From Octopus vulgaris (taxonomy: Eukaryota), in NCBI GenBank assembly GCA_951406725.2, contig OX597819.1, positions 81,468,001 through 81,532,000 on the forward strand: a stretch of 64,000 nt of DNA, given 5' to 3'. The position numbers and the translations under genes are program-made. The notes below the pieces were generated by a model. That model was not told where the DNA came from. It did no database searches and saw only the letters and a program-made list of their open reading frames with translations. Below are positions 3,101-55,780 of the stretch, piece after piece; positions within the stretch are counted from its first letter, which is position 1; the number at the start of each line of letters is the position of its first letter.

Positions 3101-5995
3101 GTTTAGAGAGAGGAAAATTGGAAAATACAATAATAGAATGGCTAAAAGTTGACAGAGTAGCTACTTGAGTATTATAATAGATGTTACAAGAAGTGTTTAT
3201 AGAGTAATTAATAGGGACTATGCTAAAGGGAATGAGAATTTCATAGAGAGCACACTATGGAAGTTATTAGAAGAGTAACATTTGAATTTATTAAGGGGGA
3301 ATAAATTATCATTAAAAGTCGTTTAATATCATTATTGAACTGGTAAAAAGAAAAGATAATGAAGAGCAGACAGTAGAAAGATGAAGAGTTTCATATTCAG
3401 TAGACAGATTTAGTGTGTCACTTGACAAATTTAGTACATCAATGGATGGACAAATACTTCATGATATTTAGTACCTTTTTCTATAATCAGAGTTCAGATC
3501 CTGCTAGGATTGACTTTACTTTGCATTCCACTGGAATTAATAAATTACGGATAAGTACTGGATTTAGTTAGATGAACTATGCACCTTTTCAAGACTGTTT
3601 AGCCTTAGTAGAATACTGGATTGGATATTCTATATTTCAAACAAGTTAAAAATTTTATTTCAGCAAAGATTTTATTACTTTTTTTATTTATCGAGTGTCA
3701 AGAAATAAGTACCTGCTTTTTGTTGTCATACAAATGAAAATGAAATCAATCAAAAATGGAATGATGTATGTAACTTTATCGATGTAGAGAAAAAGGAGGA
3801 AAGACCCATGTTTGGTCACTGGCTAATTATTTTCAGAATCAGAATTATGAAAGCACAACTCCAGAATGGTTTTGCCTATAATTTAAAATCAAACTTTACC
3901 TAAATGTTAGCACTAAAAATCCTTTGTGGACCTCAAAAGATCCATTGTGTGGCTACCTAATGCTTTTTAGAGTGAGCACCAAAGTTGAATGCTAATGCAG
4001 AATAATTCTTTACACACCACAAGAATCCATTGTATTGGTGCTTGACTAAGGTTTCTGTAGCATTAATCAGGTGAGAAGAATAAACCTCTTTTTGTGTGAG
4101 TTACTTGTGGACAGAACTAATTTTAGAAGCTCAAGCTGATAAATTTCATGCCTGCTGTTAGTTACAGCAGTCGAAATTTCTCAGTAGTTGCTTGTTTGGC
4201 TTAACTTAATTAACTTTACTGGATTCATTTCTTTTCATATTTGGACAGTACTCTTAAATTTAGTTCTCAAAGCTCGTAAGTTATCAGAAATAGGTACCTA
4301 ATTGTATGGGAATGTTACTAGTGCTAGATAATGACTATATTAAAATTGCTTTCTCTCCTTATTTAATGCATGAATTTAAAGATAAACACCAGTAAAATAT
4401 ACCTAGCACATAAAGCAACTTAAGGAAGTTATCCAGTCACTGAAGCCATGCCAAAGGCAACATTATAGCTTTATGCAGCCCTCTGGTTCACCAGTTTCTG
4501 TAAAACCCTTCAGCCAATGCTAGTATGGAAAACAGGCATTTAATGGTGATATGGTGATGATGATAATGAATGCTGGTGATATATAAAACCTCATGAGTGG
4601 ATTGATAAACAGAAACTGAAGGAAGCTTCTTGCGTATATTCATATTCATGTGAGTGTATTATGTATGTAATTATGTGTGCGTGAGCATATGTTTGTCTTG
4701 ACATCATGTGATCATTATAGACAAGTTTCACCATTCATTTCCAATTGTCTGTTAAAAATAAACCTGTATGGCCATGGGGAAATACTACCTTACTTATAAA
4801 ACAAGTGAGGATTGGATATCTGGTACTTGAGAATTAATTTCAATAAACTTTGTCCGATGACCCATGCAATTTATGGAAAAGCGAACATTAAAACAATGAT
4901 GTTGATGTTGATTACACACAAACACACACACATATATATATATCAGTAAATCAAAAACAAAAATAAAAACAAAAACAACAAAGATCAAAAGTCATACATA
5001 GTGAATGTATTAAGTTGTTACTCAATTTAAGCTGGTAAAAAAGAGTAGGGTGTGATTTTTCAAGCATGGCTCTTCAGCAGAAAGAGGAAAAGTCTGAAGA
5101 GAAGGACACAACTTGCTGCAAAGAATTGACCTCACAACCTTACAATCATGAGCCAAATTCCCTAACCATTAAGGCATGTACCTACACATATATATATATA
5201 TTTTTGATATCATCTAGGTAATAACCTCATAAAATACATTTCAAAGCTCCTCTATGATTTTCAGTTACTATATGCCATCATGCAGCAGGGTTATTCTTTT
5301 TATTGACTATACATGTGAAACTCTGTCAGTGTATGCAAAATTTGGACATCTTTTAATGACTGATTAAGTAACTGTGATGGGTGCCAGAACAATAGAAATT
5401 CAGTTTTATGAGTGGACTAGCAGACAAGGTGGCATCCCACTAGGATAAAAGGATGACCATGGGTCCTTTAAAGTAAAAAAAATTACAGAAAAAAGAGCTA
5501 ATGAATGCTTTTCGTCTATATCTTGATATTTCAGACTGCTAATTTATCTTCAGAAAAAAAAGCAACATGCTTATGATGGAATAAAAAAAGACAGAATTTT
5601 AAGTTTGATTTATAGTTTTGGTTTTGATTTCCATTAACTAATTTTGGTTTATTTGTTTTGTAATTTTACATTTTAATTTTTTAATGCTATTATTTAATTT
5701 GGTATTTTTATGACTTATATCTATTTGAATCTATAAGCTACTCAGTATAAAGAGAATGCTAAAAATACTGTTGGGTATAAAATGATGGGAAATTGAATAT
5801 GGTTCTACAGTGCTATCAAAACCACTCACCTGATGACGTCCTGGTACACATCTGCTGCCAGATCATGTTATTCTTATAATTATTTACATAATATTTTTTT
5901 GTAATAGTATGACATGGAAAAGTCAGCAACTAACAGCTGTTATCATTGCACAGAAACAGTTGTTGTGATTTGTGATTAAAGCCTCTTCATTCCAA

Positions 5996-47545: not shown

Positions 47546-47645
47546 NNNNNNNNNNNNNNNNNNNNNNNNNNNNNNNNNNNNNNNNNNNNNNNNNNNNNNN
47601 NNNNNNNNNNNNNNNNNNNNNNNNNNNNNNNNNNNNNNNNNNNNN
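47546..47645. other. Assembly gap (100 N)
   Basis: Run of N between a T1 tail and a SINE B fragment. Confidence 0.98.
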
Positions 47646-50590: not shown

Positions 50591-50975
50591 GGTGGTTGTC
50601 TACTCCTTATGCAGAGTTTGACCACCTCCTAAACCGTGACCTTAAAACCATCATGACATCTGATGTGGTTTTTTAAGCCAGATAATGTTCTGAAAAGACA
50701 CCCACATACATTGCACATCCGATTTGAACCACCAAGAGCTGCAGATAAGTTCTGATCTTTGTGGATCTTAAAATGTCTTTTGGGACCTCCATTAATATTT
50801 GCAAACCTTCTGGCATACACTGCATTCAAAGGTTTACACAGATATATTGGCAGAATAGTTGGTGGAGGTTCATTTTCCATGGGTTCATAAATGAGATTTG
50901 AGCCCAGCAAAAGAAAGGCATGGTCTGTCACAAACTGAGCACACAAAAAGATCATTGTCATTCACCTTCTGGATC
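50591..50975 (-). mobile_element. Probable LINE 3' end encoding one intact and one decayed C2H2 zinc finger
   Basis: CNVCGCLFRTLSGLKNHIRCH, preceded by ...ARRFANINGGPKRHFKIH; short 3' UTR ending in (AT)n; no splice context. Confidence 0.5.
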
Positions 50976-51015
50976 GTAACATATATATATCATCATCATC
51001 ATCATCATCATCATC

Positions 51016-51090
<75 letters not shown>

Positions 51091-51166
51091 GATTTTTATA
51101 GAACTATCCCTGATGTTTCAGGAGTGTAGCCTCACCCCCTTAGATGTTTGGAGAACTCAGATGTTT

Positions 51167-51256
51167 TTTCGGCTGATGAGTATGGGTCACTTGTATTTGC
51201 TGCAATATTTGCAGCCTTAATAAAGCTGGTCTTTGTACGAAACAATTGTACCGAAA
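51167..51256 (+). ncRNA. Type I hammerhead ribozyme with extended helix II
   Basis: tttcgg / CTGATGA / G...C (51180:51238) / GAAA / C-AATT-G / TA / ccgaaa; all core nucleotides present; palindromic stem III ACAATTGT; predicted cut after A51250 (GUA). Confidence 0.65.
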
Positions 51257-51402
51257 TATTGATCCATTTTTGTTGCTTTTTTCTTGTTTATAATCACCCC
51301 GCATTATCTTATGTTTAATACCATATAGATTTCTGGTGCATCTAAGTTAAGTACCGCATTCATGTGAATTCAACAGAACTCACTTGAATCTTAATTGCTT
51401 TT

Positions 51403-51452
<50 letters not shown>

Positions 51453-54964: not shown

Positions 54965-55780
54965 TCAAATTAATTCAGCTCTAGAATTCAGTAGGTCAGT
55001 GGAGTTCTTAGAATTAAAAAGATATTTCATTCAACTATACAAACCCTGCACCTCCTTAATCTATTAACATATGGCATGGACTGTTCTGCAATGCTCCACT
55101 CAATGGTACGAGGGATTTTCTTGGCCTTCACGTCCTAGATATATCTTGTTTACTTAGTGGTTTTCTTCCTGTCTACATACTAGAAAGAAGAATGGTGTTA
55201 AGGCTTTTTATTTTTATTAAAGTTACTTTCATATAAACCAATACGCTATTTTTTTTTAGCTTTGCTACTTTATAAAACTCATGTGAACTCAACTTCATAA
55301 ATCACTGAGCTAACTATGCATGCCTGGTCAAGAGAGCAAGTGTCTGGGTCTCTACAGTTACATTTTGGTGTAGTCTTCTGGTGTGACTTATGTGTAATAA
55401 TGTTTTTCATGTTGGAACATTTGGAAGAAGCTTTCACTGAACGTCTATTAAAAATTTTATTATACCTATGGCTATCTAGGAAAGGCTTATCTATTAAGGC
55501 AAGGTATTTTCTTAGCATTCAAAGTAAAAGGTGGTAGCCAAACCATATAATCTTCCTAGAGCTATTTTTAGGCTTAATGCTTTTTATAGTAGGGATGTAA
55601 CCCATTTTCTCTTTGAAACCACTGTTAGCCAGAGCATAGTAGGGGATTGCCTTATTGAAAATATCCTTAGGGCAGGAACAATTAGACGTCTTGTTACTAA
55701 TATTAGTTATAAGATTTTATATTTATCTCTCATTAGATGGGCGCTATTTTTATTGCTTTTACCAATAACAGAACAGTGCA
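54965..55780 (-). mobile_element. Penelope-like retroelement fragment (RT thumb, linker, GIY-YIG), decayed
   Basis: ALANSGFKEK...RKIIWF..PPF, LIDKPF..HRYNKIFNRRSVK, CNCRDPDTCSLDQAC, a YIG-like IGL motif and a C-terminal LLNSRAEL. Confidence 0.8.

What the first reader, a model, noticed from the sequence alone, without database searches (positions are those of the whole stretch)
51167..51256. Intact type I hammerhead ribozyme with an unusual ~59-nt helix II domain
Seen: stem I tttcgg/ccgaaa, CUGAUGA, G10.1-C11.1, GAAA, a 2-bp stem III closed by the palindrome ACAAUUGU, and a GUA cleavage triplet. Helix II opens with 3 Watson-Crick plus 4 G-U pairs and encloses a perfect hairpin gctgcaa-tat-ttgcagc (51199-51215). 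Established: minimal type I hammerheads with short palindromic stem III occur in Penelope-like elements and retrozymes and can cleave as dimers, normally with a short helix II. Inference: the ~310-bp module between two (TA)n arrays (about 51091-51404) may be a retrozyme or Penelope terminus family with an atypical ribozyme architecture.
Basis: partly seen in the sequence, partly recalled or inferred. Interest (0 to 1): 0.75.

Follow-up and report, generated by a model that had tools for sequence, protein, structure and literature searches.

The report
Octopus Penelope-element hammerhead, long helix II
The motif is a real hammerhead ribozyme sequence, but it sits in a dead, truncated copy of a Penelope-like jumping gene of an octopus genome, a known association whose only unusual trait is a conserved, much enlarged second helix.

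Summary
Window 51167-51256 (+) carries every conserved hammerhead core nucleotide, a 6-bp stem I, G10.1-C11.1, a 2-bp stem III inside the palindrome ACAAUUGU, and a GUA cleavage site (cut 51250|51251). Helix II is a 59-nt domain.

The motif is not a chance match and not a retrozyme. The segment 51080/51092-51404 is a young copy (about 1% from its subfamily consensus). It is the 5'-truncated 3' end of a Penelope-like element (PLE) with an RT-like plus GIY-YIG ORF, inserted in a (TA)n microsatellite of an Octopus genome. The family has at least 450 exact-core copies. Insertions are head-to-head inverted arms with two alternative 3' ends, which is the PLE "tail" signature.

At least three sequence families share the design, and two of them are linked to PLE endonuclease ORFs about 60% identical in protein. 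Stem I, basal helix II and the apical hairpin of helix II covary between them. Rfam models miss the motif, and thermodynamics alone does not favour the active fold. A double-hammerhead dimer is computed to be more stable than two monomers.

Verdict: a known kind (PLE-associated type I hammerhead) in a new structural variant (extended helix II rod). Self-cleavage is untested. Every inserted copy carries an uncut ribozyme, so the template RNAs were not cleaved there.

The parts
51018..51090 (.). (TA)n microsatellite upstream: the insertion target. It directly abuts the 5'-truncation point of the PLE fragment.
   Evidence: TRF. Other copies have unrelated upstream sequence or a longer element here.
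51080..51404 (+). 5'-truncated 3'-terminal fragment of a Penelope-like element (positions about 481/490-805 of the 805-bp reference 3' segment). It is a solo arm with no ORF. The true junction lies near 51089-51092, because the first bases overlap the TA repeat.
   Evidence: 97% identical over 325 bp to the 3' end of the ORF-bearing copy L031. 40 scored genomic copies at 95-98% identity and 3010 first-look candidates. Boundaries.
51167..51172 (+). Hammerhead stem I, 5' strand (UUUCGG).
   Evidence: Pairs with 51251-51256. Covaries between families: cgg/ccg, ugg/cca, cua/uag.
51173..51179 (+). Core C3 U4 G5 A6 U7 G8 A9 (CUGAUGA).
   Evidence: Read from the sequence.
51180..51238 (+). Helix II domain, 59 nt. 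Basal stem 51180-51186 with 51232-51238, an A/U-rich interrupted middle stem, and an apical hairpin. It folds as one long imperfect rod.
   Evidence: RNAfold of this and the other families. Basal pair 21-79 switches U-A to C-G between families.
51199..51215 (+). Apical hairpin of helix II (GCUGCAA-UAU-UUGCAGC).
   Evidence: Read from the sequence. Four of its 7 pairs show changes on both sides between families, for example C-G to U-A. It is deleted in one family B copy, L054.
51219..51224 (+). AAUAAA hexamer inside the 3' strand of helix II, ending 26 nt before the cleavage site. AAUAAA in families A and B, AUUAAA in A2. Significance unknown.
   Evidence: Alignment A1. No test was done.
51239..51241 (+). 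Core G12 A13 A14.
   Evidence: Read from the sequence.
51242..51249 (+). Helix III: A15.1-U16.1 and C15.2-G16.2 closing loop AAUU. The whole octamer ACAAUUGU is self-complementary and could form an 8-bp intermolecular helix III in a dimer.
   Evidence: Read from the sequence. Dimer energy -53.2 kcal/mol against -42.0 for two monomer hammerhead folds.
51250..51251 (+). Predicted cleavage site: after A17 (51250), before C1.1 (51251).
   Evidence: Hammerhead numbering applied to the sequence. Not tested experimentally.
51251..51256 (+). Stem I, 3' strand (CCGAAA).
51257..51292 (+). Spacer to the alternative 'short' 3' end of the family (reference position about 693, 42 nt after the cleavage site). 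Many genomic arms stop here and continue as (TA)n.
   Evidence: 11 inverted arms end here. 158 exact genomic junctions of this type against 190 that read on into the tail.
51293..51404 (+). 112-bp 'tail', present on one arm of an insertion only. It ends in ...GCTTTTAC followed by (TA)n and is well conserved between PLE families A and B.
   Evidence: The concept of the tail comes from PMC8557442 and PMC11167929.
51407..51452 (.). (TA)n downstream of the element's 3' end (target microsatellite).
   Evidence: TRF. The same tail-to-(TA)n junction is seen in nearly all copies.

Best explanation
The feature is the hammerhead ribozyme of a Penelope-like retrotransposon (PLE), preserved in a recently inserted, 5'-truncated, non-coding copy of the element's 3' end in an Octopus genome.

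In the master elements, the ribozyme lies 0.65-1.2 kb downstream of the ORF that encodes the RT-like and GIY-YIG endonuclease domains. It sits 42 nt and 154 nt upstream of the two positions at which genomic copies end.

The element nicks (TA)n DNA and copies its RNA by target-primed reverse transcription from these two sites. On this reading the two ends are the two internal RT initiation sites described for PLEs. This gives head-to-head inverted arms, one ending without and one with the 112-bp tail (inferred from copy structure and from PMC11167929).

The ribozyme has a standard type I core. Its weak 2-bp helix III is palindromic. The active fold is therefore expected to need either pairing of two copies (a double hammerhead with an 8-bp helix III) or help from the element's protein. 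The monomer prefers an inactive fold in which GUAC of helix II pairs with GUAC at the cleavage site.

Helix II has been enlarged into a conserved interrupted rod of about 20 bp. If active, cleavage would occur after A51250.

Every genomic copy contains the ribozyme uncut. The RNAs used as templates were therefore not cleaved there, so cleavage is not the step that makes the template 3' end. It more likely processes multimeric or read-through transcripts, or the fold serves as part of the protein-binding 3' module.

The window copy itself most likely has no function for the host.

Shown: the motif, repeat family, ORF linkage, insertion architecture and covariation. Inferred: catalysis, dimer or protein dependence, and biological role.
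For: - **Motif and coordinates:**
- **Dispersed young family:** (the window copy has 3 differences from its subfamily consensus).
- **5' truncations, inverted arms, constant short end at reference position 693:**. Short-end junctions number 158 and tail-continuing junctions 190.
- **ORF linkage:** the ORF-bearing copy L031 has an open frame of 696 aa. It shows a YRDD RT motif, a Cys-rich linker and a VIY...YLG GIY-YIG domain. Pfam scores GIY-YIG at 24.4 bits, above the 22.6 cut-off, and RVT_1 at 18 bits, weak.
- **Host:** the best homologue is an Octopus sinensis protein at 87% identity.
- **Family B:** its endonuclease is 59-62% identical in protein, and the same ribozyme design lies about 650 nt downstream. 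Only the endonuclease coding region and the stretch from the hammerhead to the 3' end align between families A and B.
- **Genome-wide pattern count:** 450 hits against 0 for the control, falling into several sequence families.
- **Covariation:** 90.9% of cells are paired, against 27-47% when partners are slid. Nine pairs change on both sides. None of 500 shuffles reaches the observed score.
- **Rod-like fold of helix II in all families:**
- **Energetics (kcal/mol):** the hammerhead-competent fold is -22.2 against an MFE of -24.9. The dimer is -53.2 against -49.2 for two MFE monomers.
- **Literature:** PLE hammerheads, palindromic helix III and dimers (PMC4209133). Inverted arms, tail and (TA)n bias (PMC8557442). 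Two internal RT start sites, a protein-assisted ribozyme, and cleavage not needed for insertion in vitro (PMC11167929).
Against: - No Rfam hammerhead model scores the motif, even at E<=10.
- The fold is not thermodynamically distinctive (z = -1.0), and RNAalifold does not recover the hammerhead.
- Copies are too young for the core to stand out from its flanks in conservation.
- The covariation rests on only three to four independent lineages, which are related by descent.
- No full-length element was recovered, so the RT is only partly seen and the PLE clade is unassigned.
- No cleavage or expression data are available.
- Most insertions are inverted, not tandem, so cis dimers would be rare.
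- Published PLE hammerheads cleave poorly in vitro (PMC4209133).
Confidence: 0.85

Rival explanations
1. The sequence is a conserved hammerhead-shaped RNA that no longer acts, or never mainly acted, as a self-cleaving ribozyme. On this view the core and the enlarged helix II are kept because they form part of the structured 3' module that the PLE protein binds before starting reverse transcription nearby.
For: - Every inserted copy contains the uncut motif, with ends 42 or 154 nt downstream of it.
- The region from the hammerhead to the 3' end is the only non-coding part conserved between families A and B.
- In the Anolis PLE, catalytic mutants did not affect insertion, and no RNA-seq reads ended at the cut site (PMC11167929).
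- PLE hammerheads show low activity in vitro (PMC4209133).
Against: - All 15 core nucleotides, including those needed only for chemistry (G5, G8, G12, H17 not G), are kept across diverged families. However, the search pattern itself required them.
- The Anolis hammerhead did cleave when the protein was present (PMC11167929).
Confidence: 0.3
2. It is a non-LTR retrozyme: a short non-autonomous tandem repeat whose hammerheads cut out monomers that circularise.
For: Type I hammerhead with a 2-bp helix III and a tetraloop, low GC, and a module size of about 310 bp, all as in metazoan retrozymes (PMC7229834). Retrozymes are proposed to derive from PLE pLTRs (bioRxiv 10.64898/2026.07.22.740005).
Against: - There is no tandem repeat of the module in the window.
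- All 14 close pairs in the genome listing are inverted.
- Copies are 5'-truncated at variable points of a longer ORF-bearing element.
Confidence: 0.03
3. It is a chance resemblance to the hammerhead consensus inside an AT-rich repeat, made possible by allowing a very long, loosely paired 'helix II'.
For: No Rfam hit. Unremarkable folding energy. Core-only matches do arise by chance in very large databases: 33 in metagenome contigs.
Against: - Those chance matches lack stems I and II.
- The octopus families keep stems I and II with compensatory changes.
- The motif lies exactly where PLE hammerheads are known to lie.
- The reversed-pattern control gave 0 hits.
Confidence: 0.02

Closest known systems
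Penelope-like-element hammerheads ('min-HHRs'; Cervera & de la Pena 2014, PMC4209133; dimer cleavage reported by Lunse, Weinberg & Breaker 2017, which was not readable here)
   Same: - Type I topology.
- Location in the terminal repeat region of an RT/GIY-YIG retroelement.
- G10.1-C11.1.
- A longer-than-canonical basal helix II (7 bp here, 6-8 bp reported).
- A very short palindromic helix III that predicts action as a dimer.
- No obvious loop-loop tertiary contacts.
- Thousands of dispersed, mostly solo, truncated copies.
   Different: - Helix II is not closed after 6-8 bp. It continues as a conserved extension of about 45 nt (middle stem plus apical hairpin), for 46-59 nt in total across families.
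- There is no unpaired nucleotide between A9 and G10.1.
- Helix III has a real 2-bp stem with a tetraloop, rather than being absent.
Poseidon PLE of Anolis carolinensis (PAc; Frangieh et al. 2024, PMC11167929)
   Same: - A hammerhead lies next to the place where copies end.
- There are two alternative ends that define a 'tail'.
- Targets are AT-rich.
- Both DNA strands are used, giving inverted structures.
- Insertions carry the uncleaved ribozyme.
   Different: - In PAc the ribozyme overlaps the ORF start and the tail is 30-40 bp.
- Here the ribozyme lies 0.65-1.2 kb downstream of the ORF stop and the tail is 112 bp.
- The octopus ORF has a Cys-rich linker before GIY-YIG, which PMC8557442 describes for the Neptune and Nematis clades. 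The match is by eye and the clade was not tested.
Canonical metazoan type I hammerheads and non-LTR retrozymes (Rfam RF00163; PMC7229834)
   Same: The core, 6-bp stem I, 2-bp helix III with a palindromic tetraloop, and GUH site. The same genome holds canonical 42-nt examples above the Rfam cut-off.
   Different: - Canonical forms have a 4-bp helix II with a small loop that docks on loop I, and they sit in short tandem repeats.
- This one has a 59-nt helix II, is dispersed, and fails the Rfam model.
'HHR_half_core' cases in Naiad PLEs (Craig et al. 2021, PMC8557442)
   Same: The two halves of the catalytic core are separated by 35-50 nt in a PLE 3' UTR.
   Different: Those cases were recorded as not fitting hammerhead descriptors and were left unvalidated. 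Here the long spacer folds as a helix, and the flanking helices covary.

Membership tests
Hammerhead ribozyme, type I | Conserved core: C3 U4 G5 A6 N7 G8 A9, G12 A13 A14, A15.1-U16.1, H17 not G | tested here: met
   CUGAUGA 51173-51179, GAA 51239-51241, A51242 pairs with U51249, A17 = 51250.
Hammerhead ribozyme, type I | Three helices around the core, open at helix I, supported by covariation | tested here: met
   Stems I, II (base and apex) and III are 90.9% paired, with 9 pairs changed on both sides. Slid controls give 27-47%. The support comes from only 3-4 related lineages.
Hammerhead ribozyme, type I | Reaches the curated score of an Rfam hammerhead model | tested here: not met
   No hammerhead family was listed at gathering score or at E<=10 on 401 nt. 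The 45-position model expects a short helix II.
Hammerhead ribozyme, type I | Site-specific self-cleavage 3' of H17 | not testable with these tools
   Needs in vitro transcription or RNA end mapping.
Hammerhead ribozyme, type I | Tertiary contact between helix I and helix II loops, needed for fast cleavage at physiological Mg2+ | tested here: inconclusive
   Stem I is followed by an internal loop, and helix II has an internal loop after about 7 bp. No known contact motif was recognised.
PLE-associated hammerhead (min-HHR) | Lies in the terminal (pLTR) region of an element encoding RT and GIY-YIG endonuclease | tested here: met
   L031 ORF. GIY-YIG at 24.4 bits, above the cut-off. Family B endonuclease about 650 nt upstream of its hammerhead.
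PLE-associated hammerhead (min-HHR) | Minimal or very short palindromic helix III | tested here: met
   ACAAUUGU is self-complementary. The computed dimer is 11 kcal/mol more stable than two monomer hammerhead folds.
PLE-associated hammerhead (min-HHR) | Helix II of 6-8 bp closed by a small loop, with an unpaired nucleotide between A9 and G10.1 (consensus of PMC4209133) | tested here: not met
   The basal stem is 7 bp but opens into a 45-nt extension. G10.1 follows A9 directly.
Penelope-like element | [quoted passage not shown] | tested here: met
   RT motifs FDI (family B copy L055), MGSSDS and YRDD, a Cys linker, then VIYKC...YLGC...H...H. Pfam RVT_1 is only weak, at 18 bits. Only 5'-truncated ORFs were seen.
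Penelope-like element | Insertion architecture: variable 5' truncation, adjacent inverted 5'-truncated arm, tail at one end only, microsatellite or AT-rich target | tested here: met
   The description of this architecture is from PMC8557442.
Penelope-like element | RT groups with PLE and telomerase RTs in a phylogeny; clade assignment | not tested
   No full-length RT was obtained.
Non-LTR retrozyme | Head-to-tail tandem repeats of 150-400 bp, each with a hammerhead | tested here: not met
   No such array in the window. 14 of 14 close genomic pairs are inverted.
Non-LTR retrozyme | Accumulates as small circular RNA | not testable with these tools
   No transcriptome data were available.

The most novel reading that the evidence does not exclude
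The roughly 45-nt extension of helix II may be a selected functional module rather than a tolerated insertion. It could be a docking platform through which the element's RT/endonuclease protein, or another factor, switches the RNA between the inactive GUAC hairpin fold and the active hammerhead. That would make it a natural protein-gated, allosteric hammerhead placed beside the reverse-transcription start sites. Alternatively, it could be a switch that hides or exposes the embedded AAUAAA signal. Octopus genomes would then show repeated, independent enlargement of helix II in at least two hammerhead lineages. It would also follow that the field's descriptor-based searches systematically miss this class.
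Probability: 0.2. Interest if true: 0.6.

Novelty: new variant of a known kind. Interest (0 to 1): 0.35.

Why it matters
Hammerheads in Penelope-like elements have been known since 2014, so the association is not new. The new point is structural.

Several diverged octopus PLE families keep a hammerhead whose helix II is a conserved 46-59 nt rod. A second, unrelated octopus hammerhead lineage carries a 65-75 nt insert at the same place.

Standard tools fail on such forms. Rfam models and the RNAmotif descriptors with bounded helix II do not detect them. Comparable 'half-core' cases in other PLEs were previously left unclassified. The covariation found here suggests some of those may be real ribozymes.

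The architecture puts an expandable arm next to the reverse-transcription start sites. That makes the family a convenient natural system for one open question: whether PLE hammerheads are protein-assisted or regulated ribozymes, and what they do, given that inserted copies always carry them uncut.

For the window itself the finding is ordinary: a dead transposon fragment in a microsatellite.

Tried and rejected
1. **Rfam.** Neither the gathering-score search nor the permissive search gave a hammerhead hit. Only (TA)n-driven noise appeared.
2. **Single-sequence folding and RNAalifold.** Neither recovers the hammerhead. Both prefer the competing hairpin GUACGAAACAAUUGUAC, so thermodynamics alone neither supports nor refutes the motif.
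3. **Core conservation among copies.** Copies are only 3-5% diverged and vary mostly at CpG sites, so the test has no power.
4. **Column-wise covariation of the middle part of helix II.** This was abandoned because indels shift the register between families. Per-family folds were used instead.
5. **Cross-species relatives through the ORF.** Apart from an Octopus sinensis protein, only short ENA contigs at 39-48% identity turned up. One (L077) has a hammerhead-like motif with a short helix II 72 nt after its ORF, but its base pairing is not canonical. The others show nothing clear. The phyletic spread of the long helix II is therefore unresolved.
6. **Metagenome scan with the core pattern.** It gave 33 hits, all lacking stems I and II. 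They served as a chance control, not as relatives.
7. **Retrieval of a full-length element, and of families C-F with their flanks.** This failed. No full-length PLE, no 5' pLTR and no clade assignment were obtained.
8. **Protein-level searches.** The PDB sequence search found only insignificant matches: a group II intron RT at E 0.12 and T4 endonuclease II at E 0.17. Pfam on the family B RT fragment gave no RVT_1 hit.
9. **Papers that could not be read.** Lunse et al. 2017 and Arkhipova et al. 2017 are not held. A prior description of long-helix-II PLE hammerheads there cannot be excluded.
10. **A second relaxed hammerhead-like match in the window.** It lies at 5830 (+), with a 4-nt stem I, a C/A mismatch at 10.1/11.1 and a 117-nt spacer. 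It was judged to be chance.

Full report
**1. Observation.**
- Stem I: UUUCGG (51167-51172) pairs with CCGAAA (51251-51256).
- Core: CUGAUGA (51173-51179), and G12 A13 A14 A15.1 (51239-51242).
- G10.1 is 51180 and C11.1 is 51238.
- Helix III: C15.2 (51243), loop AAUU, G16.2 (51248), U16.1 (51249).
- A17 is 51250, so cleavage would fall between 51250 and 51251.

Helix II spans 51180-51238 (59 nt). It opens with G-C, U-A, A-U and four G.U pairs, and it contains the perfect hairpin 51199-51215. TRF confirms (TA)n at 51018-51090 and 51407-51452, with (ATC)n at 50989-51017.

No Rfam family reaches its gathering score anywhere in the window. No hammerhead family is listed even at E<=10 on 51050-51450. 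The 103-nt fold is unremarkable: -22.1 kcal/mol, z = -1.0. A generic hammerhead scan of both strands of the window that requires a 5-nt stem I finds only this site.

**2. What the module is.**
The 313-bp module is a dispersed repeat of a 2.8-Gb, 227-contig genome. There were 3010 first-look candidates, and the 40 that were scored are 95-98% identical.

Alignment of flanks shows the window copy is 5'-truncated. Other copies continue upstream by variable amounts. All end at ...GCTTTTAC followed by (TA)n.

I used an 805-bp reference 3' segment, with window coordinate = reference position + 50599. On it, the window copy covers about 490-805 and the hammerhead covers 568-657.

Eleven of 30 loci have a second, inverted arm directly upstream, joined head to head. 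Its outer end lies near position 693, again followed by (TA)n, in all but one case. Genome-wide there are 158 exact junctions of this short type and 190 that read on into the remaining 112 bp. The two types often lie within about 1 kb of each other on opposite strands.

Longer copies share 2.7-3.2 kb. Locus L031 carries an open frame of 696 aa with these parts:
- RT motifs (MGSSDS, YRDD);
- a long Asn-rich linker;
- a Cys cluster;
- a GIY-YIG domain with CCHH (VIYKC...YLGC...H...H).

The endonuclease part alone passes the Pfam GIY-YIG cut-off (24.4 bits against 22.6). RVT_1 is only weak, at 18 bits. A family B copy adds RT motif A (FIQFDINNYY). The best database homologue is an Octopus sinensis protein at 87% identity. 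PLEs are annotated as a recently active class in O. vulgaris (PMC13282606).

Several published hallmarks of Penelope-like elements are present together (PMC8557442, PMC11167929):
- RT plus a C-terminal GIY-YIG domain;
- variable 5' truncation;
- inverted 5'-truncated arms;
- a tail at one end only;
- a (TA)n target.

The window holds only this one 325-bp fragment of the family. It differs from its subfamily consensus at three positions: 51183 C>T, 51234 C>T and 51314 G>T. The first two are CpG decay in helix II and turn C-G and G-C pairs into wobble pairs.

**3. Is the hammerhead real?**
Copies are too young to test core conservation. Among 39 copies found without reference to the core, 31 keep it intact, and the rest carry single point changes.

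The decisive evidence is comparative. The pattern CTGATGAG-N40-70-CGAAACAATTGTH occurs 450 times in the genome, against 0 for the reversed control. The hits fall into distinct sequence families:

| Family | Helix II base | Stem I | Cleavage triplet |
|---|---|---|---|
| A (window) | GUACGGG/UUCGUAC | uuucgg/ccgaaa | GUA |
| A2 | GUACGAG/CUCGUAC | uuucgg/ccga(u/a)a | GUA |
| B | GCACU/AGUGC | aauugg/ccaa(a)uu | GUA |
| C | GCUAU/AUAGC | aauucua/uagaauu | GUC |

Three single variants were also found.

Family B loci carry an endonuclease ORF 59-62% identical in protein to that of family A, about 650 nt upstream of their hammerhead. Between A and B, only the endonuclease coding region (67% nucleotide identity) and the stretch from the hammerhead to the 3' end (72%) can be aligned. 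The 3' UTR between them cannot be aligned. Family B shows the same short and tail-bearing ends.

I imposed the hammerhead structure on a 17-sequence alignment: stem I, four basal pairs of helix II, the apical hairpin and helix III.
- 90.9% of cells are paired, against 27-47% when partners are slid by 1-3 columns.
- Nine pairs have changes on both sides.
- None of 500 shuffles reaches the observed covariation score.

The caveat is that these are few lineages related by descent.

As a chance control, the same core pattern has 33 matches in metagenome contigs. None combines a stem I of at least 5 bp with a stem II of at least 4 bp.

**4. The helix II domain.**
In every family the 46-59 nt between G10.1 and C11.1 fold into one long interrupted hairpin. 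It has three parts:
- a basal stem of 4-7 bp;
- an A/U-rich middle stem with bulges;
- an apical hairpin of 5-9 bp.

The apical hairpin covaries. GCAA/UUGC in family A corresponds to GUAA/UUAC in family B. One family B copy has lost the apical hairpin. Indels shift the register of the middle stem between families, so I did not score it column by column.

Published PLE hammerheads have a helix II of 6-8 bp and usually an unpaired base after A9 (PMC4209133). More generally, stem II is commonly as short as 2 bp (PMC3088659). Here the basal stem fits that range, but it is extended by about 45 nt, and the unpaired base is absent.

Hammerheads tolerate additions to stem II. That is established from engineered aptamer-ribozyme fusions (my knowledge, not tested here). 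Catalysis is therefore plausible.

A second lineage in the same genome was found with Rfam RF00163 at 34-36 bits (L036, L037, L040). It has the canonical octopus core (GUAC-CUGAUGA-ACCC...GGGU-CGAAAC) with a 65-75 nt branched insert in loop II, and it also has inverted arms. Its short 42-nt relatives are present too. Enlargement of helix II has therefore happened at least twice here.

**5. Folding and mechanism.**

| State (kcal/mol) | Family consensus | Window copy |
|---|---|---|
| 105-nt monomer, MFE | -24.9 | -22.1 |
| 105-nt monomer, hammerhead fold | -22.2 | -17.7 |
| 90-nt, two MFE monomers | -49.2 | -41.0 |
| 90-nt, two hammerhead-fold monomers | -42.0 | -35.6 |
| 90-nt, double-hammerhead dimer | -53.2 | -46.8 |

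- The monomer prefers an inactive fold in which the 3' strand of helix II (GUAC) pairs with GUAC at the cleavage site.
- The dimer is domain-swapped. ACAAUUGU forms an 8-bp intermolecular helix III.
- This supports, but does not prove, the dimer model proposed for PLE hammerheads.

Most insertions are inverted pairs. All 14 close pairs in the first 100 hits are in the minus-then-plus order. Two ribozymes on the same strand are rare, although same-strand neighbours 2.1 and 4.2 kb apart exist.

One inference follows from the copies themselves. They end 42 or 154 nt downstream of the cleavage site, and all contain the intact motif. The RNAs used as templates were therefore uncleaved. This matches the Anolis PLE in four respects (PMC11167929):
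- reverse transcription starts at two internal sites downstream of the ribozyme;
- catalytic mutants insert normally;
- cleavage needs the protein;
- no RNA-seq reads end at the cut site.

My best account has three parts. First, the motif is a bona fide PLE hammerhead. Second, it is kept mostly off and is activated by dimerisation or protein. Third, it forms part of the conserved 3' module next to the RT start sites.

The role of cleavage is not settled. It could be processing of multimeric or read-through RNA, or something else. A purely structural role is the main rival.

**6. Comparison and novelty.**
The association of type I hammerheads with PLEs is known, as is the insertion architecture. 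I found no paper linking octopus PLEs to hammerheads, and none describing a conserved extension of helix II.

The closest mention is the 'HHR_half_core' note for Naiad PLEs, with 35-50 nt between core halves, which was left unvalidated (PMC8557442). Two relevant papers could not be read.

I therefore rate this a new variant of a known kind, of moderate interest to ribozyme and transposon specialists. As a feature of this window it is ordinary.

**7. Limits.**
No full-length element, 5' pLTR, clade assignment or flanks for the rarer families were obtained. No eukaryotic genomes other than this one could be searched, so the phyletic range of the design is unknown. No expression or cleavage data exist.

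Noticed in passing
L036, L037, L040 (genome C7:15930010-15930117, C1:98507175-98507282, C15:53489332-53489439): A second octopus hammerhead lineage. It has the canonical 42-nt type I core seen elsewhere in the genome (L041, L044), but with a 65-75 nt branched insert in loop II. It still scores 34-36 bits with Rfam RF00163, and its loci also show inverted head-to-head arms.
   Followed up: partly
window 51219-51224: A poly(A)-signal hexamer AAUAAA lies in the 3' strand of helix II, ending 26 nt before the ribozyme cleavage site. It is AAUAAA in families A and B and AUUAAA in A2. It is predicted to be base-paired. This could be coincidence in AT-rich sequence.
   Followed up: no
window 51293-51404; L055 and L054 downstream of their hammerheads: The 112-bp tail is the best-conserved non-coding part between PLE families A and B. 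It contains small conserved hairpins (for example UAUGGUUAAUACCAUA), and may be the site of protein binding or RT initiation.
   Followed up: partly
window 55030-55713 (-): A degenerate fragment, with many stop codons, of a different and older PLE: the end of the RT, the linker and a GIY-YIG-like region at 24-38% amino-acid identity to family A. No hammerhead remnant was found downstream of it.
   Followed up: partly
L031 7300-8200 (+): The PLE ORF has an Asn-rich, low-complexity linker of roughly 300 aa between the RT and the GIY-YIG endonuclease. It is kept in frame in this copy.
   Followed up: no
window 50632-50961 (-): A 110-aa open frame just upstream of the microsatellites ends in a C2H2 zinc-finger-like motif (CNVCGCLFRTLSGLKNHIRCH). 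The Pfam zf-C2H2 match is only E 0.064. It may be an exon or a remnant of another retroelement.
   Followed up: partly
window 47546-47645: A run of 100 N: an assembly gap or a masked stretch.
   Followed up: no
window 5830-5980 (+): A relaxed hammerhead-like match: CTGATGA, a 117-nt spacer, GAAA, a 4-nt stem I, and a C/A mismatch at 10.1/11.1. Judged to be chance.
   Followed up: partly
L077 2401-2450 (+) (ENA metagenome contig): A distant relative of the PLE ORF (42% identity) has a hammerhead-like motif with a short helix II 72 nt after its ORF stop. This suggests the long helix II is a derived trait. The source organism is unknown.
   Followed up: partly
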